In this document: piece by piece, positions 47,176-63,109 of the stretch
How positions within the stretch are numbered: position 1 is the stretch's first letter
How the letters are laid out: the number at the start of each line of letters is the position of its first letter
Virus record (IMG/VR): IMGVR_UViG_3300046507_000773
Span: 162,811 to 226,810 of that record
Direction: 5' to 3' (one strand)
Length of the DNA stretch: 64,000 nucleotides
Program-made: the position numbers and the translations under genes
The notes under the pieces: generated by a model
The model's database searches: none
What the model was told of the DNA's origin: nothing
What the model saw: the letters and a program-made list of their open reading frames with translations, nothing else

Positions 47176-47811
47176 ATGGCAAACATCGACTATACCAAGG
47201 GCCCTGAAGACATTCTGATCGACCTGATCAACGACGCGAACCCGGATAATACCCTTACCCTGGCGCAGGTTGCTCTGTCGACCCCGTCGATTGTCACCGA
47301 CGGTACGGAAGTGGGGCCATCCTTCAACAATCGCAAGACGAAGCTGACTGTTTCGGCCATTCCGGGTTCGGGTTATTCCGAGTCCGTGGACGTGCAGTAC
47401 AATCGTCTGCACTACCGTGACGTGTTCCCGACGACCGATGCTGACACCATCAAGTATCCGGTCTCGACCCACACGTTCGATCTGGCAGATCACACCAAGC
47501 TGTCGGACCTCGTTCCGCAGATCAATCAGCGCTACGGCCTGACCCTGTCGGCTGACGACTTCTGGGAGATGCCTCTCCCGACGTTCGAAGGTCTGCCTCC
47601 CTACGACGACAAGTTCGTCAAGCTTGAAGCGTTGCCCGCCTCGAAGATCTTCATCGGTGGCGTGCAGTTGAAAGTCAACCCAAACCCGTTTGACCTGGCC
47701 AACATGCCGGTGACGACCCTGAACGGTCTGGTGTATCCGACCTGGCAGGTGAAGTTCACCAACTTCGTCACTGAGACGATGGATGGCGGCCCTGGCGTTG
47801 CCTTCTGGTAA
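47176..47811 (+). CDS. Fibre-base/pilin-like virion protein, paralog 1
   Basis: LIDLINDAN...GSGYSESVDVQYNRL and VTTLNGLVY shared with paralogs. Confidence 0.65.
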   Translation: MANIDYTKGPEDILIDLINDANPDNTLTLAQVALSTPSIVTDGTEVGPSFNNRKTKLTVSAIPGSGYSESVDVQYNRLHYRDVFPTTDADTIKYPVSTHTFDLADHTKLSDLVPQINQRYGLTLSADDFWEMPLPTFEGLPPYDDKFVKLEALPASKIFIGGVQLKVNPNPFDLANMPVTTLNGLVYPTWQVKFTNFVTETMDGGPGVAFW

Positions 47812-47836
47812 AACGCTAGCGTACTAGAGAGAACTC

Positions 47837-48361
47837 ATGTCCACCTTACGACCATATGGCGGTACCAGTGCCTCGCGCTTGACCGCCATGGTCAATAGGG
47901 CGAACAAGAAGAACTTAGTGTACGGGGTCGACTTCATTTTCGGCATCCCCATCGCTGATTCTGGAGTAGACGGGCGTAATACCAAAGTTGACGTGATTCC
48001 TTTGCGTAACTTGAAAACGTACAAAGCAGCAGACGTGTTCTACCAACGACTGCCGCTTAACGTACTGAACTTGTTGCCTGAAGGGTTCACGAAACCCGTC
48101 CTCATCCATGCTGTTCCCTTCCGCATCCACCAGATCCTTCCACGGATTAATGAGGCATTAGGCCTTGACTTAATGCCGGAAGAGGTTGAGGATGCTTTGT
48201 GTGAGTCTGTGGATGAACTCTACACACTGACTGTAAAAGAAGGTAGCTTAGCTTGGCTGGCCTCCTCCGTTGAATTCGTTGCACAGCACGTCACAGACAT
48301 TCCTTTGGAAAGTATCCTGACGGTAACAATACTTAACGGGTTGCAATACAAGCCGAAGTAA
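47837..48361 (+). CDS. Fibre-base/pilin-like virion protein, paralog 2
   Basis: MVNRAN...RNTKV...DVFYQRL; ends TVTILNGLQY. Confidence 0.6.
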   Translation: MSTLRPYGGTSASRLTAMVNRANKKNLVYGVDFIFGIPIADSGVDGRNTKVDVIPLRNLKTYKAADVFYQRLPLNVLNLLPEGFTKPVLIHAVPFRIHQILPRINEALGLDLMPEEVEDALCESVDELYTLTVKEGSLAWLASSVEFVAQHVTDIPLESILTVTILNGLQYKPK

Positions 48362-48429: not shown

Positions 48430-48951
48430 ATGGCAAACCGTGACTTCACCAAGAGCGACGTACAGATCCTCCTGGACCAAATCAACGAAGACAACACCTC
48501 GGCACTGACCATCGCGCTGGTGTCGTTCGGCGCAGTCGCTACCGACAACGGCGGCGTGCGCAACTCGAAGATCAGCGCAACCGCGCTGGCTGGCTCGGGC
48601 TACAGCGGCTCGGTCGACTTCCTGTACAACCGCGTGGACCTGGCGACCATTCCTGGCGCCCGTTCGACCGTGTTCCAGGCTGGCGATGCAACCAACCTGT
48701 CGGACCTGATCGACGAGATCAACGTCGCGTACCAGCTGAACCTGACCGCCGCCGACTTCGTCGACGCGCCGATCCCGGCTTTCCCTGGCGCTGAGCCGCA
48801 CGAAACCCAGACCATCGACCTGGTCGCCAAGGCTGGCTCGCTGATCTTCGTCGGCACGCTGACCCTGACCATCGACGCGAACGACATCCCGCTGAGCAAC
48901 GTCGTGACTACGACCACGCTGAACGGCCTGACCTACACCCAGCCGGCGTAA
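48430..48951 (+). CDS. Fibre/pilin-like virion protein, paralog 3 (likely most abundant)
   Basis: LLDQINEDN...GSGYSGSVDFLYNR; ends TTTTLNGLTY; strongest codon bias of the group; upstream TATG and downstream hairpins. Confidence 0.7.
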   Translation: MANRDFTKSDVQILLDQINEDNTSALTIALVSFGAVATDNGGVRNSKISATALAGSGYSGSVDFLYNRVDLATIPGARSTVFQAGDATNLSDLIDEINVAYQLNLTAADFVDAPIPAFPGAEPHETQTIDLVAKAGSLIFVGTLTLTIDANDIPLSNVVTTTTLNGLTYTQPA

Positions 48952-49010
48952 GCTAGGCATCGGGGTGTTCTAACCAACACCCCGTAACGGTTTCAAGTCA
49001 TTGACCGCTA

Positions 49011-49042
49011 CGAGGGGGCCTCCGGGCTCCCTCGTTTATGTC
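49011..49042 (+). terminator. Terminator
   Basis: CGAGGGGGCC-TCCG-GGCTCCCTCG then TTTATG; extra hairpin at 48962-48983. Confidence 0.65.
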
Positions 49043-49105
49043 AGCTGGGTAAGTTGTTCGCTTCATCCGTATCAACATCGATTCATTTAAGGAAAGAGAA
49101 AAGCA

Positions 49106-50224
49106 ATGGCTGACCTCGACACCCTCGAACAACAGTTCGAAGATTCCGTCAACATCATCAAGCAGGTTGCAAACGGTGACGAAACCACCACTGTCAACCT
49201 GCCGAGTGGCGGTACCGTACGTTCCCTGCGCAAACTGCAAAAGGACGCCCAAGACGAACTGGACACGGCAGTTGACCTGTTCGGCGCCAACAAAGTGGAC
49301 AAATCGTCCGCCAACGCAGCTGACGGCTTCGTCGGCCTGGTCGGCTTCAAAGCCGTGCTCATGAATGCAGCCGGCGCCTTCAAGGCTCTGCTGTCGTTCG
49401 CTGGCACCGCTGACCGTGCTATCGGCTTCCAGGACAAGGACGGCACCGTCGCCTTCGTCTCGGACATCACCGATCGCATGGGCGTGGCCAATGGCCTGGC
49501 AACCCTGGACGGCAACGGTCTCATCCCTGCAGTTCAGCTGCCGAGCTACGTCGATGACGTCATCGAAGTCGCTACCAAGGCAGCTCTGCCGGCGACTGGC
49601 GAAGCTGGCAAGATCTACATCGTGCTGGCCGACGAATCCCGTTCGAACACGCTGAGCCAATATCGCTGGGGCGGTTCCGCTTACAGCCGTATCGTCTCGG
49701 CTCCAGGTTCGACCGACGAAGTCGCTGAAGGCGCAAGCAACAAGTACTTCACCGAAAGCCGCGTGCTGGCCGCCATCCTGGCTGGCTTCTCGACTGCGAC
49801 CAACGCAGCCGTGACCGCCGCTGATTCGGTGCTGGTTGCCATCGGCAAACTGCAGGCACAAGTGACGGCAGTGCTGGCTTACGCCAAGACCTACGACTTC
49901 CATGGCTTCGTGCCGGGGAAGCCGACTGCTTCGGCTACGCTGCTGTTCGTCCGTGCTGGTCGTGCCTTTACGCTGCCTGCCGGTCTGACCGGTTCGCAGT
50001 TCAAGGCCAAGACCGCAGCTACCGCGTCGACCACCATCACGCTGTACAAGAATGGTGCGGCATTCGGCACCCTCGTGTGGGCTGCCGGTGGTGTTACCCC
50101 GACCGTTACCGCGGCTTCGGCAACTTCGTTCGCTGCTGGCGACGAGCTGACCGTCGTGGCTCCGGCTACCCAGGATACCACCCTGGCCGATGTGGCTCTG
50201 ACCCTGTTGGGCTCGCAGAACTAA
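49106..50224 (+). CDS. Tail/fibre protein 1
   Basis: N-terminal NGD..T.V...G...SL.KL anchor, LPSYVDDV fibre module, beta-rich C-terminal domain. Confidence 0.75.
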   Translation: MADLDTLEQQFEDSVNIIKQVANGDETTTVNLPSGGTVRSLRKLQKDAQDELDTAVDLFGANKVDKSSANAADGFVGLVGFKAVLMNAAGAFKALLSFAGTADRAIGFQDKDGTVAFVSDITDRMGVANGLATLDGNGLIPAVQLPSYVDDVIEVATKAALPATGEAGKIYIVLADESRSNTLSQYRWGGSAYSRIVSAPGSTDEVAEGASNKYFTESRVLAAILAGFSTATNAAVTAADSVLVAIGKLQAQVTAVLAYAKTYDFHGFVPGKPTASATLLFVRAGRAFTLPAGLTGSQFKAKTAATASTTITLYKNGAAFGTLVWAAGGVTPTVTAASATSFAAGDELTVVAPATQDTTLADVALTLLGSQN

Positions 50225-50301: not shown

Positions 50302-51009
50302 ATGAGTTCCAATTTGATCCAATTGTTTTCCCAAGGTCTGTACGGACCTAGCGACCCTTACTGGGATAAGGTGATCGCTCTCCTGCACATGGACGGTGCC
50401 ATTGGTTCACAAAGCATCGTGGACCTGAAAGGGCATGCATTCTCCACTCCAGCGGGTACGGGAGTGAAAATGGTCGCAGATGCTGACGCTACTAATGGCG
50501 TTGCAGCAAACTTCGACGGCAGTGCCAACAGCTGGATTTCGAGCGCCACTGGTCTTGCAGACTACCAGTTCCACAAAGAAGACTTCACCATGGAAGCCTT
50601 CATCAATCAAAAACTGCGTTCGGCTGTCTCCCCAATCATTGCGATGGGTTACTCGCAAGCCAATGCGGGCCTGATCCTGTACGTAAATGCAAACGGCTAT
50701 CTGGACGGCTCATCCGGGCAATACAACTACCTCATCGCAAGCGGTTTGGTCGTACCACTTAACACGCGGGTTCACGTAGCCCTGACGCGTAAAGTCGGCG
50801 TTATGTCGTGCTGGCTTAACGGCCAGTTGGCAGGTCAGATTACGACCATGGAAAGTTTCGACATGTCCGATGGTCTTCTCGATATTGGCGGAACTCGTCC
50901 GGACGCTTATCGTTTCAACGGTACGATCGATGAGGTCCGTGTCACTCGCGGCGTGTCTCGTTATAACCAGCCATTCACGCCGCCTACTGGTCCGTGGCCG
51001 GAACACTAA
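50302..51009 (+). CDS. LamG/concanavalin-A-like lectin-fold protein, tip module 1
   Basis: MSSNLI start; DPYW..V..LLHMDG, DFTME, HVALTR, IDEVRVTRGVSRY. Confidence 0.8.
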   Translation: MSSNLIQLFSQGLYGPSDPYWDKVIALLHMDGAIGSQSIVDLKGHAFSTPAGTGVKMVADADATNGVAANFDGSANSWISSATGLADYQFHKEDFTMEAFINQKLRSAVSPIIAMGYSQANAGLILYVNANGYLDGSSGQYNYLIASGLVVPLNTRVHVALTRKVGVMSCWLNGQLAGQITTMESFDMSDGLLDIGGTRPDAYRFNGTIDEVRVTRGVSRYNQPFTPPTGPWPEH

Positions 51010-51018
51010 GGAAAAAAC

Positions 51019-51762
51019 ATGAGCTCCAACACAATCATTTTAGGTGGTGGCTACCTTTTGGACTATGATCCTTTTTGGAGTTCGGTAGTTGCCCTATGTC
51101 ATTTCGACGGCACCAATGGCTCCAGGGTATTTACCGAGGAGAAGGGTCATGCCATGTACTATGCTGGTAACGCAGCCTTAAGCGCGAACCAGAGCCTTTA
51201 TGGCGATACTTCTGCATATCTGGCAGGTAGTGGCGACTACTTCGCCATCAGTGCCAGTAATAACGGCAACGGTAGCGACTTCTCGCTCGCTAGCGACGAC
51301 TTCACTCTTGAGATCGCTTACCGTCATGCTCCTAATACCTGGGGTAAGATTGTCGGCAACTATCAATGGCAGGCAGGCTATAGGGGCGGTTGGTACTTGG
51401 GTGCAGGTACTGACGGCAGTCTGGCCTTTGTTACTTCCACCACACTCGTTAGTGGCGGTGCAGGAACAATTAAAGATGGCCAGTGGAATCGCATCGCTGT
51501 GGTTCGTCGGGGTACCACCTTCTATCTCTACGTCGAAGGCGTTCTGGTGGCTCAGGCTGTTCCTGCTGCGCCGACCCAAAACATTCCTGATCCAGGTACT
51601 GCTTGGGCGAAGAACCTCCGCTTCGGTTGCAAGATCACTGATGGCGCCAGCTTCGATGATTTCCTTCCGGGCTATTACGACGAATTCCGTTTGACCCGCG
51701 GCGTTGCCCGTTATTTGGGAAATAGCTATTCCCTGGCAGCTGCGGGATTCCCTAACAAGTAA
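51019..51762 (+). CDS. LamG-like protein, tip module 2
   Basis: MSSNTI; DPFW, HFDG, DFTLE, DEFRLTRGVARY. Confidence 0.8.
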   Translation: MSSNTIILGGGYLLDYDPFWSSVVALCHFDGTNGSRVFTEEKGHAMYYAGNAALSANQSLYGDTSAYLAGSGDYFAISASNNGNGSDFSLASDDFTLEIAYRHAPNTWGKIVGNYQWQAGYRGGWYLGAGTDGSLAFVTSTTLVSGGAGTIKDGQWNRIAVVRRGTTFYLYVEGVLVAQAVPAAPTQNIPDPGTAWAKNLRFGCKITDGASFDDFLPGYYDEFRLTRGVARYLGNSYSLAAAGFPNK

Positions 51763-51771
51763 GGAAACAGC

Positions 51772-52521
51772 ATGAGCTCTAACAGCATTCTCCTGGCCCA
51801 ACGGCCAAGCATTTTCGTGCCAGGTAAATCGGTACTGTTCGATGGTGCCGATCACATCCGTCTTGCTTACGATAGTCGCATTGGTGACTTCGGTAATGGC
51901 GAATGGACGATGGAAGGTTTCATCAAGTTCCTCGCAGCTCCAACTGACGATGAAGCGATTATGGCCTTCGGTAACGGTGGCGGTTCCCAGTCGCCCTACC
52001 TTCGACTCTGCTACAGTCCGAGTGGTAATTGCTTCTATGCTGATGAAGCCAATAGCGTTGTCGGTTTGTGGTCGGCAGTCGGTAACACCATCGGCCCGAT
52101 CGACTACAATCACTTCTACCACGTCGTCGCAGAGCGCTACAACGGGCAGATCACACTTTATGTGGACGGCAACTTCGATACGACCAAAGGCGCTTACCGT
52201 AATAGCTACGGTGGCTGGAACAGTGCCAGCTCCGTTCACCAGAGCGGCATGCAGTTGGTTGCAGGTTCACTCGTCTACGGTTCGCGTGGTTTCATTGAAA
52301 CTGCCAACGCTCTGCTCTCGAACCTGCGCGTCACCAAAGGCCGGGCAGTCTACAAAGGTAACTTCACGCCCCCGACTTCGAAACTCGAAGCTGGTGAGGG
52401 CACGACCGTACTGCTGTGCAATTCCGACACCCTCGTTGATGCAAGTCCTTACAACTGGCCGCTGATTCTGGACAACTCGACGCCAACCATCAGCGACGTG
52501 TCACCTTTTGTTTCTAACTGA
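51772..52521 (+). CDS. LamG-like protein, tip module 3
   Basis: MSSNSI; WTMEGF, HVVAER, SNLRVTKGRAVY...FTPP. Confidence 0.78.
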   Translation: MSSNSILLAQRPSIFVPGKSVLFDGADHIRLAYDSRIGDFGNGEWTMEGFIKFLAAPTDDEAIMAFGNGGGSQSPYLRLCYSPSGNCFYADEANSVVGLWSAVGNTIGPIDYNHFYHVVAERYNGQITLYVDGNFDTTKGAYRNSYGGWNSASSVHQSGMQLVAGSLVYGSRGFIETANALLSNLRVTKGRAVYKGNFTPPTSKLEAGEGTTVLLCNSDTLVDASPYNWPLILDNSTPTISDVSPFVSN

Positions 52522-52548
52522 AGCTTATCCTGAACAGTAACAAAGATA

Positions 52549-52578
52549 GGGGTTTGCTCATAAGGCGAACCTCTTTTT
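52549..52578 (+). terminator. Terminator inside the lectin array
   Basis: GGTTTGC-TCATAAG-GCGAACC plus TCTTTTT. Confidence 0.7.
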
Positions 52579-52636
52579 CCAAACCAATAAGAAGAAGACT
52601 ACGCTAGTAGTCCAACTCAGACCCTAGGAAGATAGC

Positions 52637-52729
52637 ATGTCTAACAATTTTATTCAAGTACTGGGTACCCAGTCAGACCCCTTCTGGAACTTCGTCAACG
52701 TGCTGTTGGATTTTGATGGAGTGAAATAG
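52637..52729 (+). pseudogene. 30-aa truncated tip module (MSNNFIQVLGTQSDPFWNFVNVLLDFDGVK)
   Basis: Translated by hand; AGGA SD; keeps the family N-terminal motif and DPFW...FDG, then stops 2 nt before the next paralog. Confidence 0.75.
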
Positions 52730-52731
52730 TC

Positions 52732-53535
52732 ATGAGTTCCAATAGCATCATTCTCGCAGCCATTATCGCTGCTTACCCAGGTTCCAATGAAACGAGCATT
52801 TCCGATCCTTATTGGCAAAATGTTGCTCTCCTGATGCATGCGGACGGAACAGACGCAGCAAATTTCTTTACCGATGCCACAGGTAAGTCGACTCTGACGA
52901 CAGTTGCAGTAGGGTCTTCCAAACCCTATACGAGTACACGAAAGAGTTTTGCTGGTCCCACCAGCGCTTATTTCGATGGCATGGGTGGTCACATCAACTC
53001 GAGTCTGAATCCTGACTTCAGCTTCCCGGCTGGAACAGACTTCACCATTGAGGCATGGGTCAACATGACCAGTCTTGTCGGTTCAGGTCAAGTTCCTCGC
53101 TCCTGTATCATTTTCGGTTTCGATGCCACAAGTGGCGATGGCAGCGGTCCCAGGACTTGGTCGATTTTTGTCAGTAACAATGGTGCTCTAATTTTCGAAA
53201 ATGCTGCTTCTGACGGATCGCGCAATTTTGCTATGTCCTCGGCGGCTGCGGCCATTAGGGTTAATAGCTGGCAACATGTTGCGATCGTTCGCAAGGGTAC
53301 TACGATGTACATGTTCATTGATGGCAGGTCCATTGCGTTCACGAAGAGCGGACCTGCCAGTGTGAATGTGGATGTATTAAGCTCTGGCTATATCCGCTTG
53401 GGACGCCTGTACACCTCTAGCGATTGGGATTATCGCCTCAACGGCTACATTGACGAGGTGCGCATTACTAAAGGCGTGGCTCGTTATAGTGCCGATTTCA
53501 CTCCTCCACCAGGGGCATTTGCCAACAACGCTTAA
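52732..53535 (+). CDS. LamG-like protein, tip module 4
   Basis: MSSNSI; DPYW, DFTIEAWV, WQHVAIVR, IDEVRITKGVARY. Confidence 0.8.
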   Translation: MSSNSIILAAIIAAYPGSNETSISDPYWQNVALLMHADGTDAANFFTDATGKSTLTTVAVGSSKPYTSTRKSFAGPTSAYFDGMGGHINSSLNPDFSFPAGTDFTIEAWVNMTSLVGSGQVPRSCIIFGFDATSGDGSGPRTWSIFVSNNGALIFENAASDGSRNFAMSSAAAAIRVNSWQHVAIVRKGTTMYMFIDGRSIAFTKSGPASVNVDVLSSGYIRLGRLYTSSDWDYRLNGYIDEVRITKGVARYSADFTPPPGAFANNA

Positions 53536-53560
53536 GTACTGTTTATTCTAGGAAGATATC

Positions 53561-54268
53561 ATGTCTAACAATAGCATCATCACCCCAGGCCTCTTTGCCA
53601 CGGCGTATGGTCCGAACCTGTTTGATCCCGACCATGACCCGTATTGGAATAAGGTTGCGACCCTTATGCATTTCGACGGAGCCCAAGGTAACTCCTCCTT
53701 CGTCGATGTGAAAGGTCGCCCCATCACCAACTACGGCGTAATTACCGATTTGGGAAATCCAGCAATTGCTCCATCAACAGCCTACTTCGGTGGTGCCGCC
53801 CAGGCTATGATCATTAGTCAGGTGGATGACAACCAGACCGGTGACTTCACGATTGAATGGTTCGGTAAGTGGGAGACCATCGGCAACTGTACCCTGTTCG
53901 ATACTCGCCCGCAGTCCACCAATGGTCCATACATGGACTTTTTCTACTCCAGTGGTGGTGTCGGTATCTGGTTTAACAATGCAACTGCAGTGTATGCTGC
54001 TTTTGTACCTGCGCAGAATAGGACCTATCACCTTGCATTGTCTCGTAAAGGTGGAATTATTCGCTTCTTCATCGACGGCGCGATCTACTTCACCTGGAAC
54101 TATGCTGGTGTCGTGGCCATCCCTCGTTTCTTCTTGGGTGGCAACGGATACAACCAGGCACAGGACTGGTACAAAGGCCGCATGAGTGAATTCCGTTATA
54201 CCAAAGGTGTCGGTCGTTATGAGAATTCGTTCATTCCAGTCTACGCACGCTTCCCAGCTTCACTGTAA
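53561..54268 (+). CDS. LamG-like protein, tip module 5
   Basis: MSNNSI; DPYW, HFDG, DFTIE, EFRYTKGVGRY. Confidence 0.8.
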   Translation: MSNNSIITPGLFATAYGPNLFDPDHDPYWNKVATLMHFDGAQGNSSFVDVKGRPITNYGVITDLGNPAIAPSTAYFGGAAQAMIISQVDDNQTGDFTIEWFGKWETIGNCTLFDTRPQSTNGPYMDFFYSSGGVGIWFNNATAVYAAFVPAQNRTYHLALSRKGGIIRFFIDGAIYFTWNYAGVVAIPRFFLGGNGYNQAQDWYKGRMSEFRYTKGVGRYENSFIPVYARFPASL

Positions 54269-56300: not shown

Positions 56301-56948
56301 GTGTCTAGTAATTCGATTATCCTGGCGCAAGCGCAACTTGCGGCAGATCTGAAAACTGTTTTGCTGATGCACTTTCAGAACACTTACGCTGACGATACCG
56401 GCAAAACTGTCACTGTAAGTGGCAGTCCCATCTTCAGTGGTGGTGCAACTGCCGGCACGCAGTGTCTGCGCCTCATTGGTTCTGAAAATCTTTCGGTCGG
56501 TCCACACAGTGATTTCATCTTCGGCAATGATGACTTCACGATGGAATGTTTCCTCTACAACACGCAGCAAACCTCTAGCGGTGTTGAGAATCTCATTAGT
56601 CTGTCTAACGGCACAGCCGGCATTGGGATGGGCTACTATCCAGGCAACAATCTCGTCTACCTGGCCAGTGGAACAACTGTACTGGCTACGGCAGCTTTGG
56701 GTTCAGCCACCAACTGGCCTCACGTTGCCTACAGCAGAAAAGGAAACGTGGGTCGTCTCTTCATCCGTGGCGTAAAGGTTGCCGAGGTTGCCGATAATTC
56801 ACCTATCAACAGTGGCATGTGTACTGTTGGTAAGGCGTCGGTCGGTGGTCCGTATAACTGGTACGGCTATCTCGATGAAGTGCGAGTATCGAAAGGTGCT
56901 CGTTACTGGGATAACTTCGCAGCACCCGTGGCTCCTTTGAGTCTTTAA
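56301..56948 (+). CDS. LamG-like protein, tip module 9 (GTG start)
   Basis: SD AAGGAG; (M)SSNSIIL; DFTMECF, HVAYSR, LDEVRVSKG. Confidence 0.78.
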   Translation: MSSNSIILAQAQLAADLKTVLLMHFQNTYADDTGKTVTVSGSPIFSGGATAGTQCLRLIGSENLSVGPHSDFIFGNDDFTMECFLYNTQQTSSGVENLISLSNGTAGIGMGYYPGNNLVYLASGTTVLATAALGSATNWPHVAYSRKGNVGRLFIRGVKVAEVADNSPINSGMCTVGKASVGGPYNWYGYLDEVRVSKGARYWDNFAAPVAPLSL

Positions 56949-57089: not shown

Positions 57090-57587
57090 ATGACTACGGC
57101 TAAAGACTTGCTGTTTCAGTTAATCAACGAGTCCAATCATTCCAAGCATCCTTTGAACAACAATGACGTGTCCTTCAGTGACCCACAATTGGATATCAGC
57201 ACAGCAAAGAATTCTAAAATCCAGCTCACTGCACGACCCGGCTCAGGTTACAAAGGAAGTATTTGGATATCCTACAGTCGAGAATCATTAGGGAATGTAC
57301 ATCTTCCGACCCAAATCCTGTCGGAAGTTACGTTCACCGTCGAAAGTATTTTGGCAGCCCTAAACGCAAAGCTGCTTGTCCCGATCACGCTTGAAGATCT
57401 GGAACCTTTCACACTCCCTCTCCTGAACGTCGGTGATATCCTCACCCTCGATCTCTCGGCCCGTAGTGGATCTTTGGCATGGATTGCCGCTACAACGATT
57501 TCGCTCTTGTACGGCCTCCCGCCCAACATTGACGATGTGTACACAATTTTCAATTCGGAACTACCCGTCAAATTTCCACCTAAATAA
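57090..57587 (+). CDS. Fibre-base/adaptor protein, paralog 4
   Basis: LFQLINESN...NSKI...GSGYKGSIWISYSR. Confidence 0.65.
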   Translation: MTTAKDLLFQLINESNHSKHPLNNNDVSFSDPQLDISTAKNSKIQLTARPGSGYKGSIWISYSRESLGNVHLPTQILSEVTFTVESILAALNAKLLVPITLEDLEPFTLPLLNVGDILTLDLSARSGSLAWIAATTISLLYGLPPNIDDVYTIFNSELPVKFPPK

Positions 57588-57598: not shown

Positions 57599-58366
57599 AT
57601 GTCAACAGTGACACCTGACCCCACAGTAGTGGCTGTCATCGCGCGACTAAAAGCAGCCGTAGCACTGGCTGAAGCTTGGACGCAAGGTGACGTAGCCCTA
57701 GATGTGGTAGGTACAGCAGGCACGTACCCATCCCTAGCGAAGTTGATGAAGTCAACCCAAGACCAAATCAATGCGCTATTGACCAATCCCACTCTTCTTG
57801 GTACCGGTGGTTTCACGCCGCCCAAGGGAACAACTGCCCAGCGTGAAGCTGCCGCAGCAAAGGGGCGTGTTCGTTACAACACGACTCTTGACACAATTGA
57901 GATTTTGACGGCCAATGGTTGGCTCTCTTTACAGAACCTTGTGATCTCAACGTATCGTGGAAGTGTTGTGCCCTCCACTGGCACGACCAGGATTCCTTAC
58001 GACACGACGCCTCCGGCAGTAACGGAAGGCACGCAACTTTGGTCGGTCACAGTAGCGCCCAAGGTAATTGGCTCCATCATGTCGATTGACTTTGCAACAA
58101 TGGTCGATAATAGTAACAATGGAAATCTGTCGATGGCGATTTTCAAAGGCAATACGTTAATTGGTGTTACGGGTATTAACATTGCTGGTAACAAAGCAGC
58201 CGGCATGGCCATTAGCGTGAATGATCCAGTCACCTCTCTTACTCCTGTTACCTACAGCTGCCGATTCGGTAATACAGCCGGCACCTGGTATCAAGGTCGT
58301 GGTTCAACTACCACGTATGGCGGCGCCATTACAAATGGCTGGAAGATTGACGAGGTGCTGCCATGA
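57599..58366 (+). CDS. Short tail/fibre protein 2
   Basis: GD...V....G.YPSLAKLMK anchor; GTTAQR...G.VRYNTTL fibre motif; beta-rich tip. Confidence 0.7.
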   Translation: MSTVTPDPTVVAVIARLKAAVALAEAWTQGDVALDVVGTAGTYPSLAKLMKSTQDQINALLTNPTLLGTGGFTPPKGTTAQREAAAAKGRVRYNTTLDTIEILTANGWLSLQNLVISTYRGSVVPSTGTTRIPYDTTPPAVTEGTQLWSVTVAPKVIGSIMSIDFATMVDNSNNGNLSMAIFKGNTLIGVTGINIAGNKAAGMAISVNDPVTSLTPVTYSCRFGNTAGTWYQGRGSTTTYGGAITNGWKIDEVLP

Positions 58367-58908
58367 ACTACATTGATCTGATCGGTGAATTCTTCCCGAA
58401 CGTACAAGCGTGGTGCGAAGGCGATCCTTCGAATTACGACGACGTCCAAGTCCACGAAAATGGCGATCCGCTTCCAAGCAAGGAACAACTCGACATCATC
58501 GACTGGGCAAACCGTCAGCACCTGAAGTGGTTGGAAATCCGAAACGAGCGAGACCGTCGTTATTACCAGGGCGTTTATCTCGATGGCGTCGACGGTAATT
58601 TCTATTGGTTCTGGACCGATCTCGATACCCGCAGCAAATACGGGATGTACGACATCACAATTCGTAGCGCCAATCTTGGTCCCAACGTTGTCTTGGACAA
58701 CTGGAAAACCATGACGGGTGCTTTTACTCCCATGACGGTTCAACAGCTCTATCGTGTTATTGGAGCAGCAGTCATGAACGAGAAGGCCATCTTCAATACG
58801 GCCGAGGCAAAGAACGCCGAGATGATGTTGCTCGACGATCCGGATACCTACGACAATGTCTACGCTGGCTGGCCTACTTGCTACAGCGATACGCTTACCC
58901 AAGCGTAG
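58363..58908 (+). CDS. Tail fibre assembly chaperone-like protein (DUF4376-like)
   Basis: ATGA overlap with the fibre gene; IRNERDRR...GV...W.TD..TR...WKTM.G.F pattern. Confidence 0.65.
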   Translation: MNYIDLIGEFFPNVQAWCEGDPSNYDDVQVHENGDPLPSKEQLDIIDWANRQHLKWLEIRNERDRRYYQGVYLDGVDGNFYWFWTDLDTRSKYGMYDITIRSANLGPNVVLDNWKTMTGAFTPMTVQQLYRVIGAAVMNEKAIFNTAEAKNAEMMLLDDPDTYDNVYAGWPTCYSDTLTQA

Positions 58909-58990: not shown

Positions 58991-59530
58991 ATGAAAATTA
59001 ATCCCAATCTGTCGGGGATGGGTAACGTCTTAGGGCTGATCAACTCGGCAAATCCGGGAAAAGATTTCACCACAGCCCAAGTCTACGTCAAGAGTGTCAC
59101 TCCCCGCACGCCTGATTCCAATCCCTACAACAGCACAGCAGTCGTCAGTGGAACCACCGACGGACCGTACAAGAACGACCAGGTAGTCTTCTACAACAGG
59201 AGGCCTATCACAGAAGCCGTAGAAAGCCCTGTGGTGAGTTATCAGGTCGACGAGCTCACAACCTTGGCCGACTTAGTACAAATGGTCTCCAGGGGCCTTA
59301 AAATCGTTTCTAGCGAAGTCGAGCTTGTTGGCTTCAAAACGGAAAAGGATAGCTCGGTTAGCACGATGACCTTGCAGCCCATTGCCAATTCTCTCCTCTA
59401 CGTTGATACGTTCGATATCGTTCTCGTGTGGTCAGGAGAAGAAGTACAAGAAGCCGTCCAAGTTCTCTGGGCTGAAGACGAACTCAACAAATTGATCAAC
59501 GTAACTATGCCCAGTCGCGGTTACCTGTAA
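58991..59530 (+). CDS. Fibre-base/adaptor protein, paralog 5
   Basis: LGLINSAN...YNSTA...GPY...VFYNR. Confidence 0.65.
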   Translation: MKINPNLSGMGNVLGLINSANPGKDFTTAQVYVKSVTPRTPDSNPYNSTAVVSGTTDGPYKNDQVVFYNRRPITEAVESPVVSYQVDELTTLADLVQMVSRGLKIVSSEVELVGFKTEKDSSVSTMTLQPIANSLLYVDTFDIVLVWSGEEVQEAVQVLWAEDELNKLINVTMPSRGYL

Positions 59531-59539: not shown

Positions 59540-62500
59540 ATGTCAATCATTTCGGATATCGTCGCAAGGCTGACTCGAAACGAGCAGCGGTTGAATGACG
59601 TCGTCAACGGAGACGATAAAACCGTCGTGCAAACCGATGGCGGGCCATTGCCTTCGCTTGCCAAGCTCATCAAGGACAAGCAAGACAAGATCGACCAATT
59701 TATTCCTTTGGTGGATCAAAAGGAAGACAAGGATCAAAAAGATGCTGAGAACGGTTACGCCGGTCTCGGTGATGATTTCATGCTGCGTGTTAAGAATGCA
59801 GCCGGTAGTGTCGCCTCGTTTATCACGAGCATCGCTACCGAAGCGCAAACGTTCATCCTCCCAGCGAAGGGTGGTACGTTTGCAATGACGAGCGACCTGC
59901 ATGACCCTGAAACAAAAGAAGGCATCCTGGAAAAACTGGGTGCGGATAAAGTCACCGGCTCGAACACTGGTGACCAGAGCCTGGAATCTTTGGGTGCACA
60001 ACCCAAGCTGGGCTACCCTCCTCTGGACGCGCGCCTTGCCGATATGCCAGGGGGCTTCCCTGTTCTGGATGAAGATGCAAAACTTCCTGTAAAGTACATC
60101 CCGGACACGACCAAGTCGATCCTCGAATACCCGACCATCGATGACTTCCCGGCTACCGGTCTGGAAGAAAAGTTCTATCTGGACAAGTCGACCAAGAAGG
60201 CGTACTTCTGGGACGGCAGTGCTTACCAGACCGTCGGTACTTCGACGGGCGACACGGACTCGATCGTCGAGGGTGACACCAACCTCTTCTTCACCGGTCA
60301 GCGTGTTCTCGATACGGTCCTGCAAGGCTTTAACCTGGTGGTCAACGGGTTCGTGACGGGTGCAGACTCGGTCATGACGGCAATTGCCAAGTTGCAGCTC
60401 CAAATCAACAACCTCACCACTTCGGACAACCTCAAAGCCCCGAAGGCCAATCCGACTTTCACGGGTAACGTGAATGTGCCGGATACCGATACGTCGGTCA
60501 GCGGCAACAACGCTGTCAACACGCGTTCGCTTAATCAGCGAGTCAGTGACTACGACACCGGTATCCAGATTGCGATGGGGCTGAAAGAAAACGTCATCAA
60601 CAAGGCAAGTAACTTCGCCACGGTGAACAACATCCTGTACCCGACGATCCAGGCTGTAAAGGCTTACGTCGACTCCCTCATCGTCGCCGTCTTGAAAGAT
60701 TGCGGCAGCTGGGACGCTAGCGGAAACGTGTTCCCGACAACGGGTGGCACTGGTGCAGGCGGCGCGATCCTCAAGGGTAACTTCTGGTACGTGAGTGTGG
60801 CTGGTATTTTGGCTGGTGGTCCTGTCAACGTGGGTGACTCGTTCCGTGCTCTCGTGGATAACCCTGGTCAAGATCCTGCGAAGTGGGATGTGCTCGAATC
60901 GAACATCGGTTACGTGCCGCTTAACAAAGCAGGTGACTCGATCGGCTTCCTGACTGTGCTGGGACAATTCATCGCCAATTCAGCGGCCACCTTCAAGGGT
61001 TTCGTTACCTTGAGCGGTACAGCAGGAGACAGCGGCGGTTATATCAAGATGAGCCGCCCTGGTTATCCACAGTGGATGCTGGAAGACTTGAACCAGCCAG
61101 TCGACCAGCGCATTTGGGGTAACTGGGTCAACCCGGATGGCACGCTCATCATGGGAACGCAAACCAATGCCGGTGTAGGCACCGCAGCTATGATTCTGGC
61201 GCGTTCTGGAAGTGGTGGTCGTCACATCGCTTACGCCCGAGGTCTTACGCTGAAGAACCCGATTGCCAACGTCGATGTCGACTTTGCTCTCGATGGTCAA
61301 GCTGGCTGGGGTCGTTACATCTCGTTCCATACGAGCGGCAAACCGCGCTGGTTCCTTGGCGCTAGTTCGGCAGCAGAAGGCGGCGCTAACGCAGGCAGCT
61401 ACTTCGAACTGTACCGCTACGACGATAACGGCAACTACATCGATTGCGTGATGTCGTTCTCGCGTTCGACTGGTCGTGCCACGTTCACTCTGGCTCCCTC
61501 GATCCCGACGGTGTCCAACGGTGACAACACGAATGCTGCAGCATCGACGCAGTGGGTACAGAACCAAAAGGGTATCGCTAACGGTCTGGCTCCTTTGGGT
61601 TCCGACTCGAAAATCGCTGCCATCTATCTGCCCAGCTACGTCGACGATGTGGTTGAAGCGGCTACAAAAGCAGCACTGCCTGCCACGGGTGAAACCGGCA
61701 AGATCTACGTTGTGTTCGCCGATGAAACGAATGGCGGCAAAACGTGGCAATACCGCTGGGGTGGTACGACGTACGTCTCGATCATCCCAAGTCCCGGTAC
61801 GACTGACAGCGTGGCTGAAGGTGCAGGTAACCTTTACTTCACGCAGAGCCGCGTACTGAACACGTTGCTGGCTGGTCTTAACGCTGGTCTCAGCGGCGCA
61901 GTTGCTGCAAGCGATACCGTGCTGCAAGCCTTCGGCAAGATCCAAAACACCTTGGCGGCATTGCAGGCAGTCGATGCGACCAAGGTCAATGTGCAAAATG
62001 CCACGATGACTGGCACCGTATCGATGAATACCACAGCGGTGAACATGGCATCCGATAGCGTCCCGGACAACATGCTCGTCGGTATCAGTGGTCAGGCTAA
62101 CTCCTATCGTTACATTCAGTGGCGTACGCTGGGAGTGAATCGCTGGTCGCTCGGTACCATTGCAGCGGCAGGTGAATCGGGTTCGAACGCTGGCAGTGAC
62201 TTTGCCATGTACAACTACGCCGATAATGGTTCCTTCCTCGGCACGGTGTTCACGATCGCTCGCGCCACGGGCATCATGTCGTTCGGTCAGGCACCGATCG
62301 TGGGTACCGTGCCTAGCACGGATGTCAGCGGCAAAGCTGTCTCGACACAGTGGATCTCGAACGTTCGTGGTTCGCCTAATGGATTGGCTCCTCTGGGCGC
62401 TGACTCCAAGGTGCCTGCTGCTTACCTGCCAAGCTACGTGGACGACGTGTTGGAATACGCTACGTACGCTGCTCTGCCAGGCGTTGGTGAAACCGGAAAG

Positions 62501-63109
62501 ATCTACGTGGTCATTTCGGATGCCAATAACGGTAACAAGACCTGGCAGTATCGTTGGACGGGTAGCTCCTACGCGGCGATCACGCCGAGTCCTGGTACGA
62601 CGGATGCGGTTCCGGAAGGCGCAACCAACCTGTACTTCACCAACAACCGAGCAGTCAATGCACCGGTGTCGAACTCACAAGGTGGCGTTCGTGCCAAAGT
62701 AGCAGATGGCGATGCGCTCAATACGGCCGTCGCCAAACTGCAGGCCAACCTCAACAAGTTGATCTACGACATCTCCGGCGGTTTCTCCGGTAAGGTAACG
62801 GCAGGTGACAAGACGTACATCCACGTCACGGCACGTTCTGTTATCTTTAGTGAGGCCCTGGGTGCAACTACCCAGGCGTACGCAGCCGTTGCTCCAACTG
62901 GCTCGGTCACGTTCACGATCTACGCTGGTACGACGGCTACCGTTCTCGGAACGATTACGTTCGCAGCTGGACAGACCGTGGGTGTTCCGTCAATGAATGC
63001 TTCGAGCATCAATCCTGGTGTTCCTATCTTCATCACGGCGCCTGCTGCAGCCGATGCAACGATCGCAGATGTGATCATTACGATTCCTGCCTACACGGCT
63101 AACTCGTAA
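59540..63109 (+). CDS. Long tail/fibre protein 3 with internal repeats
   Basis: NGDDKTVV...PSLAKL anchor, three LPSYVDDV-type modules, C-domain similar to fibre 1. Confidence 0.8.
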   Translation: MSIISDIVARLTRNEQRLNDVVNGDDKTVVQTDGGPLPSLAKLIKDKQDKIDQFIPLVDQKEDKDQKDAENGYAGLGDDFMLRVKNAAGSVASFITSIATEAQTFILPAKGGTFAMTSDLHDPETKEGILEKLGADKVTGSNTGDQSLESLGAQPKLGYPPLDARLADMPGGFPVLDEDAKLPVKYIPDTTKSILEYPTIDDFPATGLEEKFYLDKSTKKAYFWDGSAYQTVGTSTGDTDSIVEGDTNLFFTGQRVLDTVLQGFNLVVNGFVTGADSVMTAIAKLQLQINNLTTSDNLKAPKANPTFTGNVNVPDTDTSVSGNNAVNTRSLNQRVSDYDTGIQIAMGLKENVINKASNFATVNNILYPTIQAVKAYVDSLIVAVLKDCGSWDASGNVFPTTGGTGAGGAILKGNFWYVSVAGILAGGPVNVGDSFRALVDNPGQDPAKWDVLESNIGYVPLNKAGDSIGFLTVLGQFIANSAATFKGFVTLSGTAGDSGGYIKMSRPGYPQWMLEDLNQPVDQRIWGNWVNPDGTLIMGTQTNAGVGTAAMILARSGSGGRHIAYARGLTLKNPIANVDVDFALDGQAGWGRYISFHTSGKPRWFLGASSAAEGGANAGSYFELYRYDDNGNYIDCVMSFSRSTGRATFTLAPSIPTVSNGDNTNAAASTQWVQNQKGIANGLAPLGSDSKIAAIYLPSYVDDVVEAATKAALPATGETGKIYVVFADETNGGKTWQYRWGGTTYVSIIPSPGTTDSVAEGAGNLYFTQSRVLNTLLAGLNAGLSGAVAASDTVLQAFGKIQNTLAALQAVDATKVNVQNATMTGTVSMNTTAVNMASDSVPDNMLVGISGQANSYRYIQWRTLGVNRWSLGTIAAAGESGSNAGSDFAMYNYADNGSFLGTVFTIARATGIMSFGQAPIVGTVPSTDVSGKAVSTQWISNVRGSPNGLAPLGADSKVPAAYLPSYVDDVLEYATYAALPGVGETGKIYVVISDANNGNKTWQYRWTGSSYAAITPSPGTTDAVPEGATNLYFTNNRAVNAPVSNSQGGVRAKVADGDALNTAVAKLQANLNKLIYDISGGFSGKVTAGDKTYIHVTARSVIFSEALGATTQAYAAVAPTGSVTFTIYAGTTATVLGTITFAAGQTVGVPSMNASSINPGVPIFITAPAAADATIADVIITIPAYTANS

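What the first reader, a model, noticed from the sequence alone, without database searches (positions are those of the whole stretch)
47176..63109. Thrice-repeated fibre-building unit: pilin-like subunit, fibre, tip or chaperone
Seen: five paralogs share LIN..N / N(S/T) / GxY..V.Y.R. Three (47176, 47837, 48430) carry a C-terminal T(T/I)LNGLxY strand, whereas 57090 and 58991 have a different C-terminal segment. Each group precedes a fibre with the same N-terminal GD..V...G..SL.KL anchor (49106, 57599, 59540). 48430 has high-expression codons and its own flanking signals. Inference: a strand-exchange polymer (hair or whisker) with a major subunit and capping adaptors that mount different fibres, analogous to a pilus with tip adhesins.
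Basis: partly seen in the sequence, partly recalled or inferred. Interest (0 to 1): 0.62.

Follow-up and report, generated by a model that had tools for sequence, protein, structure and literature searches.

The report
Chimallivirus DUF7941 filament subunits with fibres

Summary
Five paralogs (47176, 47837, 48430, 57090, 58991) all match Pfam DUF7941 (PF25613). Three fibres (49106, 57599, 59540) share an N-terminal module.

The contig is an uncultured rhizosphere chimallivirus: it has a chimallin homolog, phiKZ-type internal head proteins, and is colinear with phiKZ gp89-gp101.

DUF7941 was described in April 2026 (Goslar cryoEM preprint). That work reports hundreds to thousands of copies per virion, predicted head-to-tail oligomers, gp22 filaments seen by EM, and phiKZ gp127 at the outer baseplate.

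- **Fold:** the 48430 model (pLDDT 91.6) matches only the phiKZ outer-baseplate chain 9xqd_0 (Z 11.7).
- **Polymer:** a two-copy prediction passes its controls (0.48 against 0.00). The C-terminal TTTLNGLTY tail of one copy sits in the groove formed by the LIN..N helix and the GxY..V.Y.R hairpin of the other.
- **Major subunit:** 48430 has capsid-grade codon bias (99th percentile) and is the most conserved gene of the locus.
- **Adaptors (inferred only):** 57090 and 58991 have different, conserved C-tails. In every related chimallivirus locus examined they lie 8-24 nt upstream of a fibre with this N-terminal module.

There is no homology to pilins. Verdict: a new member of a known kind, with a split adaptor-plus-fibre layout.

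The parts
47070..47105 (+). Hairpin followed by TTTTATGCCG: a terminator-like site plus a putative late-promoter motif, ahead of the first subunit gene
   Evidence: -20.8 kcal/mol, z -3.05. It is the same kind of hairpin + T-run + ATG site; a strict scan listed 44 others in the contig.
47176..47811 (+). D1, DUF7941 short-form subunit (211 aa). It has the donor tail TTLNGLVY plus a 24-residue conserved extension (..FTNFVTETMDGGPGVAFW).
   Evidence: PF25613 E 3.5e-31. Orthologs are 211 aa. Tail. Codon-bias proxy at the 87th percentile.
47837..48361 (+). D2, DUF7941 short-form subunit (174 aa) with donor tail TILNGLQY. Its weak codon bias suggests a minor subunit.
   Evidence: PF25613 E 8.8e-17. 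Codon-bias proxy at the 8th percentile. Tail.
48430..48951 (+). D3, the major DUF7941 subunit (173 aa). It has a globular domain (residues 1-150) and a donor tail (152-172, TTTLNGLTY).
   Evidence: - PF25613 E 8.5e-35.
- AF2 model pLDDT 91.6.
- Fold match to 9xqd_0: Foldseek E 1.5e-6 and VIA Z 11.7.
- Head-to-tail two-copy prediction: 0.48 against 0.00 for the controls.
- 99th percentile for codon bias.
- Most conserved gene of the locus, 74-76% identity.
48961..49045 (+). Two hairpins after D3. The second is followed by TTTATG. Together they look like a terminator plus a promoter-like module that separates D3 from fibre F1.
   Evidence: (-15.9 and -28.3 kcal/mol).
49106..50224 (+). F1, fibre (372 aa). 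It has the N-terminal helix-hairpin-helix module, one fibre-repeat unit, and a C-terminal tip domain shared with F3.
   Evidence: A2 and A5. BLASTP against F3 gives 56% identity over 138 aa and 41% over 224 aa. phrog_7049 tail fiber. Codon-bias proxy at the 95th percentile.
50302..56948 (+). Array of eight Laminin_G_3 paralogs plus one SPRY-like paralog. All begin M-S-(S/N)-N-x-I, except 54996, which begins MACNLI. A truncated remnant lies at 52637-52729. These are candidate lectin decorations of the filament system.
   Evidence: - PF13385 and PF00622 hits.
- In FLC9 gp323 and in L003-L006, a homologous LamG domain is fused behind a DUF7941 module (BLASTP E 1e-14 to 1e-5).
- AF2 model pLDDT 88.2, with residues 1-20 unstructured.
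- Alignment A6.
57090..57587 (+). D4, DUF7941 short form (165 aa) with a non-canonical tail (..LYGLPPNIDDVYTIFNSELPVKFPPK). It lies 11 nt upstream of F2 and is the proposed F2 adaptor.
   Evidence: PF25613 E 8.2e-18. Tail is conserved in orthologs. Adjacency is conserved.
57599..58366 (+). F2, short fibre (255 aa) with the shared N-terminal module.
   Evidence: A2 and A5. Orthologs are 257 and 260 aa.
58363..58908 (+). DUF4376 protein (181 aa). Its start overlaps the F2 stop codon (ATGA). It is a candidate fibre chaperone or distal part.
   Evidence: PF14301 E 1.9e-10. phrog_2837 'tail protein'. Position is conserved in L030, L031 and L027-L029.
58991..59530 (+). D5, DUF7941 short form (179 aa) with the conserved extreme C-terminal tail LINVTMPSRGYL. 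It lies 9 nt upstream of F3 and is the proposed F3 adaptor.
   Evidence: PF25613 E 2.3e-13. Tail motif (L)(I/V)N(V/I/Y)T(L/M)P(S/A).GY(L/F/V) is fully conserved in four of the five related loci checked and partly in L027 (..VNVTLPSYNLLG). Adjacency.
59540..63109 (+). F3, long fibre (1189 aa). It has the shared N-terminal module, three copies of the roughly 140-aa fibre repeat, and a C-terminal tip related to that of F1.
   Evidence: Orthologs are 625 and 977 aa, so the body length is variable.
63153..63998 (+). Partial gene cut by the contig end. It has an Lcl_C-like stretch. Its orthologs (573 and 577 aa) carry the GP38 adhesin domain, so it is a possible tip protein for F3.
   Evidence: PF07603, E 8.4e-7, below the curated cut-off. 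(PF05268 and PF24299 in the orthologs).

Best explanation
The locus is the DUF7941 filament module of an uncultured rhizosphere chimallivirus (a nucleus-forming, phiKZ-like jumbo phage).

**How it most likely works**
- All five small proteins are the short, Goslar-gp23-type form of DUF7941: one globular domain of about 150 residues followed by a C-terminal tail of about 20 residues.
- The tail of one subunit (T-x-L-N-G-L-x-Y) lies in a groove on the next subunit. The groove is formed by the first helix (LIN..N) and the GxY..V.Y.R hairpin. Repeating this contact gives a head-to-tail, non-covalent chain.
- 48430 (D3) is the abundant chain-building subunit.
- 47176 (D1) and 47837 (D2) are minor subunits with the same donor tail.
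- By analogy with phiKZ gp127, the chain is rooted on the outer periphery of the baseplate through the globular domain of the first subunit.
- 57090 (D4) and 58991 (D5) keep the acceptor groove but carry different, conserved tails. Each is probably translationally coupled to a fibre gene. They most likely end or branch a chain and hold fibres F2 and F3.
- The fibres' shared N-terminal helix-hairpin-helix module is the candidate handle.
- The LamG paralogs between the units are likely further lectin cargo of the same system.

**Status of each step**
- Shown here: family membership, fold, genome type, codon bias, synteny.
- Predicted with controls: D3 head-to-tail contact.
- Inferred: filament length and copy number, baseplate attachment, adaptor-fibre contact, LamG attachment.
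For: **Family and genome type**
- PF25613 matches for all five proteins. They are the only five in the contig.
- Chimallin homolog (E 1.8e-25), PF12699 proteins, and colinearity with phiKZ gp89-gp101.

**Literature**
- DUF7941 proteins gp22 and gp23 are present at about 580 and 2140 copies per Goslar virion.
- AlphaFold3 predicts head-to-tail oligomers.
- gp22 forms filaments in negative stain.
- phiKZ gp126-gp127 fit density in the outer peripheral baseplate.
- The phiKZ atlas places one gp127 at the end of each gp139 band.

**Fold**
- D3 model pLDDT 91.6.
- Its only clear PDB match is 9xqd_0: Foldseek E 1.5e-6, and VIA Z 11.7 with rmsd 3.2 A over 140 of 150 residues. The next best Z is 4.5.

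**Two-copy prediction**
- Median ipSAE 0.48 (runs 0.48, 0.77, 0.38); best of 3 controls 0.00.
- Runs share at least 89% of contacts; partner pLDDT at least 82.
- In the tool's calibration, 20 of 30 solved pairs and 1 of 23 single chains reach this mark.
- The interface is asymmetric: tail 152-172 contacts residues 3-31, 50-52 and 55-69 of the other copy.
- Interface positions are more conserved than the rest (Mann-Whitney p 0.0017; 12 of the 22 positions that are at least 85% conserved).

**Major subunit**
- D3 has GC3 0.873 and Nc 28.1, the 99th percentile for codon bias.
- D3 is the most conserved gene of the locus.

**Adaptors and cargo**
- All 14 anchor-bearing fibres in related chimallivirus loci, and the 3 in the window, follow a DUF7941 gene. 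The gap is 8-24 nt for D4/D5 types and 154-239 nt for D3 to F1.
- The same arrangement holds in a sixth context.
- Fibre bodies vary (372/518/665 aa and 1189/625/977 aa), while the adaptors and N-modules stay conserved.
- D4 and D5 tails are conserved.
- Natural fusions exist: DUF7941-LamG in FLC9, DUF7941-depolymerase in PhiKp24 gp294 and gp295, and DUF7941-CBM/GH/LRR in Goslar.
Against: - There is no experimental datum for this phage. It is known only from metagenomes, and no RNA run holds it.
- The contact prediction is a model's own confidence, and it was run with my own alignment.
- In phiKZ the DUF7941 chain is only two subunits long, with about six copies per virion. Long filaments are therefore not universal in the family.
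- The fibre N-module is widespread: 797 representative clusters. It also occurs in a bacterial prophage with no DUF7941 nearby, so it does not need a DUF7941 partner.
- No natural DUF7941-anchor fusion was seen among the best 150 anchor proteins.
- F1 is separated from D3 by terminators, so its partner is unclear.
Confidence: 0.68

Rival explanations
1. **Short socket, no filament.** As in phiKZ, the DUF7941 proteins form only a short, low-copy chain of two to five subunits at each of the six baseplate lobes. This chain serves as a fixed socket for the extra fibres. There is no long filament or 'cloud'.
For: - The phiKZ structure shows one gp127 per star lobe. Its partner gp126 (147 aa) has no donor tail.
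- Five different paralogs with conserved order would fit a defined hetero-oligomer.
Against: - D3 has codon bias equal to the major capsid gene (99th percentile), while D2, D4 and D5 are at the 2nd to 13th percentiles. This argues for a large excess of D3.
- D3 is predicted to bind itself head-to-tail.
- Goslar gp23, also a short form, is present at about 2140 copies.
Confidence: 0.17
2. **Fibres independent of DUF7941.** F1-F3 attach to the baseplate or neck through their own N-terminal module. The DUF7941 genes merely share a host-range island with them.
For: - The N-module occurs in 797 protein clusters, almost always at residues 1-70 of fibre-sized proteins.
- One checked case lies in a bacterial genome prophage with no DUF7941.
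- The module can repeat in tandem (P0044), as a shaft element would.
- The island sits directly after the neck genes (homologs of gp98 terminator and gp99 stopper).
Against: - In chimallivirus-like loci, 17 of 17 such fibres are directly preceded by a DUF7941 gene, mostly at 8-24 nt. This holds across relatives whose D3 is only 36-40% identical.
- The contig has separate canonical phiKZ gp131/133/134/135-type fibres and the gp130/gp139 socket proteins elsewhere. F1-F3 are therefore extra fibres that need another mount.
- DUF7941 is covalently fused to receptor-binding domains in Goslar, PhiKp24 and FLC9.
Confidence: 0.3
3. **Head or neck decoration.** The small paralogs are capsid or collar hairs rather than baseplate-rooted filaments.
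For: - PHROGs files the family under 'head and packaging'.
- The genes follow the internal-head-protein and neck genes.
- Goslar has unrelated collar filaments, so neck filaments do exist in this group.
Against: - The only solved relative, phiKZ gp127, sits in the outer peripheral baseplate.
- The PHROG category is an automatic label.
- Goslar's collar filament protein gp126 is a different family.
Confidence: 0.07

Closest known systems
Goslar gp22/gp23 and the proposed 'DUF7941 fibre cloud' (bioRxiv 10.64898/2026.04.21.720040)
   Same: - Same Pfam family. My profile hits Goslar gp22, gp23, gp31, gp33 and gp34 at E 1e-17 to 1e-24.
- Same genome type (chimallivirus).
- Same predicted head-to-tail contact of the post-domain linker on the next N-domain.
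- One short paralog is predicted to be highly abundant (D3 here, gp23 there).
- Both are associated with carbohydrate-binding modules.
   Different: - All five members here are the short form. None has the gp22-type C-terminal globular domain (Pfam positions beyond about 176 are unmatched).
- Receptor-binding parts are separate genes (fibres F1-F3, LamG paralogs), not C-terminal fusions.
- Two paralogs carry a distinct conserved tail and are coupled to fibre genes.
- Goslar's fibres gp25 and gp29 are gp131-like and lack the N-module seen here.
phiKZ gp127/gp126, outer peripheral baseplate (PDB 9xqd; Nat Commun 2026, PMC13250141)
   Same: - Same fold: Z 11.7 with 140 of 150 residues aligned.
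- My profile hits gp127 residues 1-151 (E 6e-9) and gp126 (E 1e-5).
   Different: - Only 16% identity.
- phiKZ has a two-member chain at about six sites per virion.
- The phiKZ genes lie next to wedge gene gp128. Here the genes lie after the gp101 homolog, about 145 kb from the gp128 homolog.
Burkholderia phage FLC9 and metagenomic relatives: tandem DUF7941 arrays
   Same: - Closest cultured relative: 53% identity on D3.
- Chimallin present.
- Orthologs of D2, D3 and D4 are recognisable.
   Different: - FLC9-type loci carry 8-13 tandem DUF7941 genes, mostly the long 265-330 aa form ending in ..HYN.
- One of these is fused to LamG.
- No fibres with the N-module lie within 10-15 kb.
Klebsiella phage PhiKp24 hyperbranched tail fibres (PMC9700779)
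   Same: - Two of its 14 depolymerase fibres (gp294, gp295) begin with a DUF7941 domain (E 2e-21 and 2e-27).
- The genome has a weak chimallin homolog (E 7e-6).
- Branched fibre networks were imaged on this phage.
   Different: - DUF7941 is fused to beta-helix enzymes there.
- That paper explains branching through T4 gp10-like domains and does not discuss DUF7941.
Chaperone-usher pili (donor-strand exchange) with tip adhesins
   Same: Works alike in outline. It is a non-covalent polymer in which a terminal peptide of one subunit binds the next. There is one major subunit plus minor subunits that may carry adhesive parts.
   Different: - No homology and a different alpha/beta fold, with no pilin among the structural matches.
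- The donor is C-terminal, not N-terminal.
- The monomer is predicted to fold completely without the donor.
- There is no chaperone or usher. Assembly happens in the cytoplasm on a virion.

Membership tests
Pfam DUF7941 (PF25613), chimallivirus filament proteins | Match to the family profile above the curated cut-off | tested here: met
   All five score 50.7-121 bits against a cut-off of 27. The six-frame genome search gives the same five places.
Pfam DUF7941 (PF25613), chimallivirus filament proteins | N-terminal globular domain with the fold of phiKZ gp127 residues 1-150 | tested here: met
   D3 model against 9xqd_0: Foldseek E 1.5e-6 and TM 0.67. VIA Z 11.7, rmsd 3.2 A, 140 residues aligned. 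Only D3 was folded.
Pfam DUF7941 (PF25613), chimallivirus filament proteins | Encoded by a chimallivirus (nuclear-shell protein present) | tested here: met
   Homolog of phiKZ gp54 at contig 162101-163324 (E 1.8e-25). PF12699 proteins. Colinear with gp89-gp101.
Pfam DUF7941 (PF25613), chimallivirus filament proteins | Head-to-tail self-association through the segment after the N-domain | tested here: met
   This is a prediction only. ipSAE median 0.48 against 0.00 for the best control. Tail 152-172 contacts residues 3-31 and 55-69 of the other copy. Runs agree in at least 89% of contacts, and partner pLDDT is at least 82.
Pfam DUF7941 (PF25613), chimallivirus filament proteins | C-terminal globular domain (long, gp22-type form) | tested here: not met
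   The matches stop at profile position 154-176 of 276. All five proteins are the short gp23-type form, which the family also includes.
Pfam DUF7941 (PF25613), chimallivirus filament proteins | High copy number in virions and filament formation in vitro | not testable with these tools
   Only a proxy is available: the codon bias of D3 at the 99th percentile.
Chaperone-usher or other bacterial pilins | Incomplete Ig-like pilin fold that is completed by a donor strand | tested here: not met
   No pilin appears among the Foldseek or VIA matches. The monomer model is confident without a donor strand.
phiKZ gp131-type baseplate fibres | gp131-like N-terminal domain that forms the hetero-hexameric basal complex | tested here: not met
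   The F1-F3 N-module profile finds nothing in phiKZ gp131-135 or in Goslar gp25 and gp29. The contig's true gp131/133/134/135 homologs lie at 75953-85203.
Concanavalin A-like lectin, Laminin_G_3 (the interposed paralogs) | Match to PF13385 and a beta-sandwich fold | tested here: met
   Seven paralogs were scanned and score above the cut-off; the eighth (54277) was not scanned but aligns with them in A6. One paralog is SPRY-like but below its cut-off. The model has pLDDT 88.2 and is all-beta from residue 21 on.

The most novel reading that the evidence does not exclude
The DUF7941 chain is a general mounting rail. Short terminal peptides act as plugs that fix different cargo to it:
- canonical T.LNGL.Y tails extend or branch the rail (one relative's D3-like subunit has two such motifs in tandem);
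- the distinct tails of D4 and D5 (LINVTMPSRGYL type) grip the N-terminal module of trimeric fibres;
- the flexible, genome-specific N-peptide of the LamG lectins (MSSNxI here, MPNNYI and MPLNCL in two relatives) plugs them onto the same scaffold.

This would make a modular, exchangeable host-recognition cloud, assembled from separate genes rather than from fusions.
Probability: 0.22. Interest if true: 0.65.

Novelty: new member of a known kind. Interest (0 to 1): 0.38.

Why it matters
How nucleus-forming jumbo phages find their hosts is still open. The DUF7941 'fibre cloud' is so far a model that rests on one phage.

This locus adds independent, sequence-level support.
- The family's conserved motifs are exactly the predicted donor and acceptor surfaces.
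- One paralog has the expression signature of a bulk building block.

It also shows a layout not described in the preprint. The receptor-binding parts are separate genes, each paired with its own small DUF7941 protein carrying a special tail.

If that pairing is physical, it gives a simple rule for reading host-range modules in chimallivirus genomes. It also gives a handle for swapping fibres in laboratory phages. The practical limit is that this phage is uncultured, so tests must use relatives such as FLC9 or Goslar.

Tried and rejected
- **Near-identity DNA search in the phage collection:** no match.
- **Sequence searches of the PDB:** neither the D3 protein alone nor the five-paralog profile found the phiKZ chain. 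Only the fold search did.
- **Locus search with the 42-row alignment:** it was too diverse to use. A 16-row alignment worked.
- **Pfam on the fibres:** nothing found.
- **tblastn of the F3 N-module in cultured phages:** only one weak hit.
- **Sigma-70 promoter scan:** found none. This is expected for a phage that has its own RNA polymerases.
- **Pilin homology:** rejected, with no structural match.
- **F1-F3 as the canonical phiKZ-type baseplate fibres:** rejected, because those are encoded elsewhere in the contig.
- **The conserved LamG N-peptide as simply the first strand of the sandwich:** not supported. The model leaves residues 1-20 unstructured, with pLDDT 57 and below 50 at residues 9-12.
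- **Natural fusions of DUF7941 to the fibre N-module:** none among the best 150 anchor proteins.
- **Expression evidence:** no RNA run holds the locus.
- **Long antisense ORFs over the biased genes (for example 48376-48960, minus strand):** taken as by-products of high GC3, not as genes.

Full report
**Observation**

On the + strand, ORFs at 47176-47811, 47837-48361, 48430-48951, 57090-57587 and 58991-59530 are paralogs. I call them D1-D5.
- They are 20-44% identical to one another (A1).
- Each matches Pfam PF25613 (DUF7941) at 50.7-121 bits against a cut-off of 27. Each matches phrog_1037 'virion structural protein'.
D1-D3 have the C-terminal T(T/I)LNGLxY, and D4 and D5 end differently.

ORFs 49106, 57599 and 59540 (F1-F3) share an N-terminal module of about 60 residues: helix, then GD..T.V....G..(P/R)SL.KL.K..QD (A2).

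A six-frame search of the whole 226.8-kb contig finds exactly five DUF7941 genes and exactly three proteins with this N-module, all in this locus.

The 47176 start is preferred over 47080. The earlier ATG sits inside a terminator-like hairpin, and the orthologs are 211 aa.

**Where the window comes from**

The window is the last 64 kb of an IMG/VR virus contig that CheckV rates as 86% complete. The contig is a chimallivirus, meaning a nucleus-forming, phiKZ-like jumbo phage.
- It encodes a homolog of the phiKZ nuclear-shell protein gp54 (E 1.8e-25).
- It encodes two phiKZ-type internal head proteins.
- It has homologs of phiKZ gp120, gp128-gp131, gp133-gp135, gp139 and gp140.
- Window 36499-47060 is colinear with phiKZ gp89, gp90, gp91, the internal head proteins, gp98 (tail terminator), gp99 (stopper), gp100 and gp101.

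The DUF7941, fibre and LamG island follows this block. The closest cultured relative is Burkholderia phage FLC9, with 53% identity on D3. The DNA occurs in several rhizosphere metagenomes, and no RNA run holds it.

**What is already known about the family**

A bioRxiv preprint of April 2026 on phage Goslar (10.64898/2026.04.21.720040) defines DUF7941 as a chimallivirus-specific family. It reports the following.
- Two paralogs are present at about 580 (gp22) and about 2140 (gp23) copies per virion.
- AlphaFold3 predicts head-to-tail oligomers, in which the linker after the N-domain docks on the next N-domain.
- Purified gp22 forms filaments in negative stain.
- Some paralogs are fused to carbohydrate-binding, glycoside-hydrolase or LRR domains.
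- The phiKZ gp126-gp127 pair fits unexplained density at the outer peripheral baseplate.

The phiKZ atlas (PMC13250141) places one gp127 at the end of each gp139 band.

**Structure and the head-to-tail contact**

With 42 homologs, AlphaFold2 gives a confident D3 model: pLDDT 91.6, an alpha/beta domain over residues 1-150, and an unstructured tail from 150 to 173.

Its only clear match in the PDB is chain 9xqd_0, a 150-residue chain of the phiKZ outer peripheral baseplate.
- Foldseek gives E 1.5e-6.
- VIA-align gives Z 11.7, rmsd 3.2 A and 140 aligned residues. The next best Z is 4.5.
- My family profile also hits phiKZ gp127 residues 1-151 (E 6e-9).
- No pilin appears among the matches.

A two-copy prediction of D3 passes the tool's test.
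- Median ipSAE is 0.48 (runs 0.48, 0.77, 0.38). The best of three controls is 0.00.
- The runs agree in at least 89% of contacts, and partner pLDDT is at least 82.
- In the tool's calibration, 20 of 30 solved pairs and 1 of 23 single chains reach this mark. Those counts hold only roughly, because my own alignment was used.

The interface is asymmetric. Tail residues 152-172 of one copy (TTTLNGLTY is 161-169) contact residues 3-31 (the LLDQINEDN helix), 50-52 and 55-69 (GSGYSGSVDFLYNRV) of the other copy. L164 and L167 are the best-defined contacts.

So the family's conserved motifs are the predicted acceptor and donor surfaces. Interface positions are more conserved than the rest (Mann-Whitney p 0.0017). 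Twelve of the 22 positions that are at least 85% conserved lie in the interface.

No solved structure contains such a DUF7941 pair, so recall from memory is unlikely. This remains a prediction. Because the monomer folds confidently on its own, the contact is better described as a tail lying in a groove and extending a sheet than as classical donor-strand complementation.

**The major subunit**

- D3 has GC3 0.873, Nc 28.1 and the 99th percentile of a codon-adaptation proxy. This is like the major capsid gene, which has Nc 26.9.
- F1 is at the 95th percentile and D1 at the 87th.
- D2, D4, F2 and D5 are at the 1st to 13th percentiles.
- D3 is also the most conserved gene of the locus: 74-76% identity to two relatives, against 47-66% for its neighbours in the same comparisons.
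- Two stable hairpins follow it. The second has the hairpin + TTTATG signature, which occurs at 44 sites in the contig.

**Comparative genomics**

Two close relatives, L030 and L031, have the same gene order:
D1, D2, D3, F1, LamG paralogs, D4, F2, a DUF4376 protein, D5, F3, and a GP38-domain protein.

Fibre lengths differ: F1 is 372, 518 or 665 aa, and F3 is 1189, 625 or 977 aa. The small proteins, their tails and the fibre N-modules are conserved.

More distant relatives keep the pairing of a small DUF7941 gene followed directly by a fibre with the N-module. These are L027-L029, whose D3 is 36-40% identical, L039, and a 238-kb contig.

The gap is 8-24 nt for the D4/D5 types and 154-239 nt for D3 to F1.

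The D5-type tail has a strict motif at the extreme C-terminus: (L)(I/V)N(V/I/Y)T(L/M)P(S/A).GY(L/F/V). D4 has LYGLPPN..D..TI(F/M)N. D1 has the canonical donor plus a conserved extension.

There is a caveat. The N-module is widespread: 797 representative clusters at E up to 1e-3, nearly always at residues 1-70 and sometimes in tandem. One checked instance lies in a bacterial prophage without DUF7941.

**Links to receptor-binding parts**

FLC9-type loci instead carry 8-13 tandem DUF7941 genes, mostly of the long form. In FLC9 gp323 and four metagenomic relatives, the DUF7941 module is fused to a LamG domain homologous to the window's LamG paralogs (E 1e-14 to 1e-5).

PhiKp24 is known for its imaged hyperbranched fibres. 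Its depolymerase fibres gp294 and gp295 begin with DUF7941 (E 2e-21 and 2e-27), and that phage has a weak chimallin homolog.

These fusions indicate that DUF7941 is a mounting domain for host-recognition parts. In the window, those parts are split into separate genes.

The contig's canonical gp131-type fibres and their socket proteins are encoded elsewhere. F1-F3 are therefore additional fibres.

**Proposed mechanism**

- D3 polymerises head-to-tail into chains. This is predicted here and supported by homology.
- The chains are rooted at the baseplate periphery. This is inferred from phiKZ.
- D1 and D2 are minor chain members.
- D4 and D5 accept a canonical tail on their conserved groove and use their own distinct tails to hold F2 and F3. 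This is inferred from adjacency, tail conservation and the fusions.
- The LamG lectins are further cargo. This is inferred from the FLC9 fusion.

**Rivals**

- A short phiKZ-like socket without long filaments. D3's codon bias and its predicted self-contact argue against this.
- Fibres that mount independently of DUF7941. This is not excluded, given how widespread the N-module is.
- A head or neck decoration. This is unlikely, given where gp127 sits in phiKZ.

**Novelty and limits**

The family and its polymer model are published, so this is a new member of a known kind. What the preprint does not describe is the all-short-form set with dedicated, fibre-coupled paralogs and stand-alone LamG cargo.

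Nothing here is experimental for this phage, and the adaptor contacts were not tested. The standard code (table 11) was used throughout.

Noticed in passing
window 50302-56948: Eight Laminin_G_3 paralogs plus one SPRY-like paralog are only 24-30% identical overall. All begin M-S-(S/N)-N-x-I except 54996, which begins MACNLI. Relatives use MPNNYI or MPLNCL. N4 is nearly invariant across 20 paralogs from four genomes. In the AF2 model this peptide is flexible and lies outside the beta-sandwich. It may be a docking peptide.
   Followed up: partly
window 52637-52729: A 30-codon remnant of a further LamG paralog (MSNNFIQVLGTQSDPFWNFVNVLLDFDGVK, then a stop) lies in the 210-nt spacer before 52732. 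It is evidence of turnover in the array. Relatives have 3 to 6 copies.
   Followed up: partly
whole contig; in the window near 47070-47105, 49010-49045, 56955-56985 and 58915-58945 (a similar hairpin at 63113-63140 is followed by TTTTTTATTTC, not ATG): A strict scan listed 44 sites on both strands with a GC-rich hairpin followed at once by a T-run and ATGC(C/T)G. They look like combined terminator and phiKZ-type late-promoter (TATG) modules for the phage's own RNA polymerase.
   Followed up: partly
window 1-603 (contig 162101-163324): The C-terminal part of a homolog of the phiKZ nuclear-shell protein chimallin (E 1.8e-25). This marks the phage as nucleus-forming.
   Followed up: yes
window 36499-47060: This stretch is colinear with phiKZ gp89, gp90, gp91, the internal head proteins, gp98 (tail terminator), gp99 (stopper; Pfam calls it head-tail joining), gp100 and gp101. 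The filament and fibre island is appended to this conserved block.
   Followed up: yes
window 63153-63998: A gene cut by the contig end, with a weak Lcl_C-like match. Its orthologs in two relatives (573 and 577 aa) carry the T-even GP38 adhesin domain and DUF7483. It may be a tip adhesin for the long fibre.
   Followed up: no
window 59540-63109 and 49106-50224: F3 contains three copies of a repeat of about 140 aa (GLAPLG..K.P..YLPSYVDDV.E....ALP..GE.GKIY.V...YRW.GS.Y). F1 has one copy, and phiKZ gp125 (next to gp126) has a short match to it. F1 and F3 also share the C-terminal tip domain.
   Followed up: partly
L041 (Klebsiella phage vB_KpM_FBKp24) 5995-10119: Two of the 14 depolymerase fibres of the 'hyperbranched' phage PhiKp24 (gp295, gp294) begin with a DUF7941 domain. 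The genome has a weak chimallin homolog. The published branching model for that phage does not mention this domain.
   Followed up: partly
L001 (Burkholderia phage FLC9) 21606-22470; L027 3696-4268: The FLC9 array ends with a D4-like short protein followed by a stand-alone gene that encodes only the DUF7941 C-terminal domain (116 aa, ending ..VVQYND). In L027 and L028 the D3-like subunit has two donor-like motifs in tandem (LLSGF.LP and .LNGF.FP), which could allow branching.
   Followed up: no
window 48376-48960 (minus strand) and similar: Long antisense ORFs overlie the most codon-biased genes. They are a by-product of high GC3 and should not be annotated as genes.
   Followed up: partly
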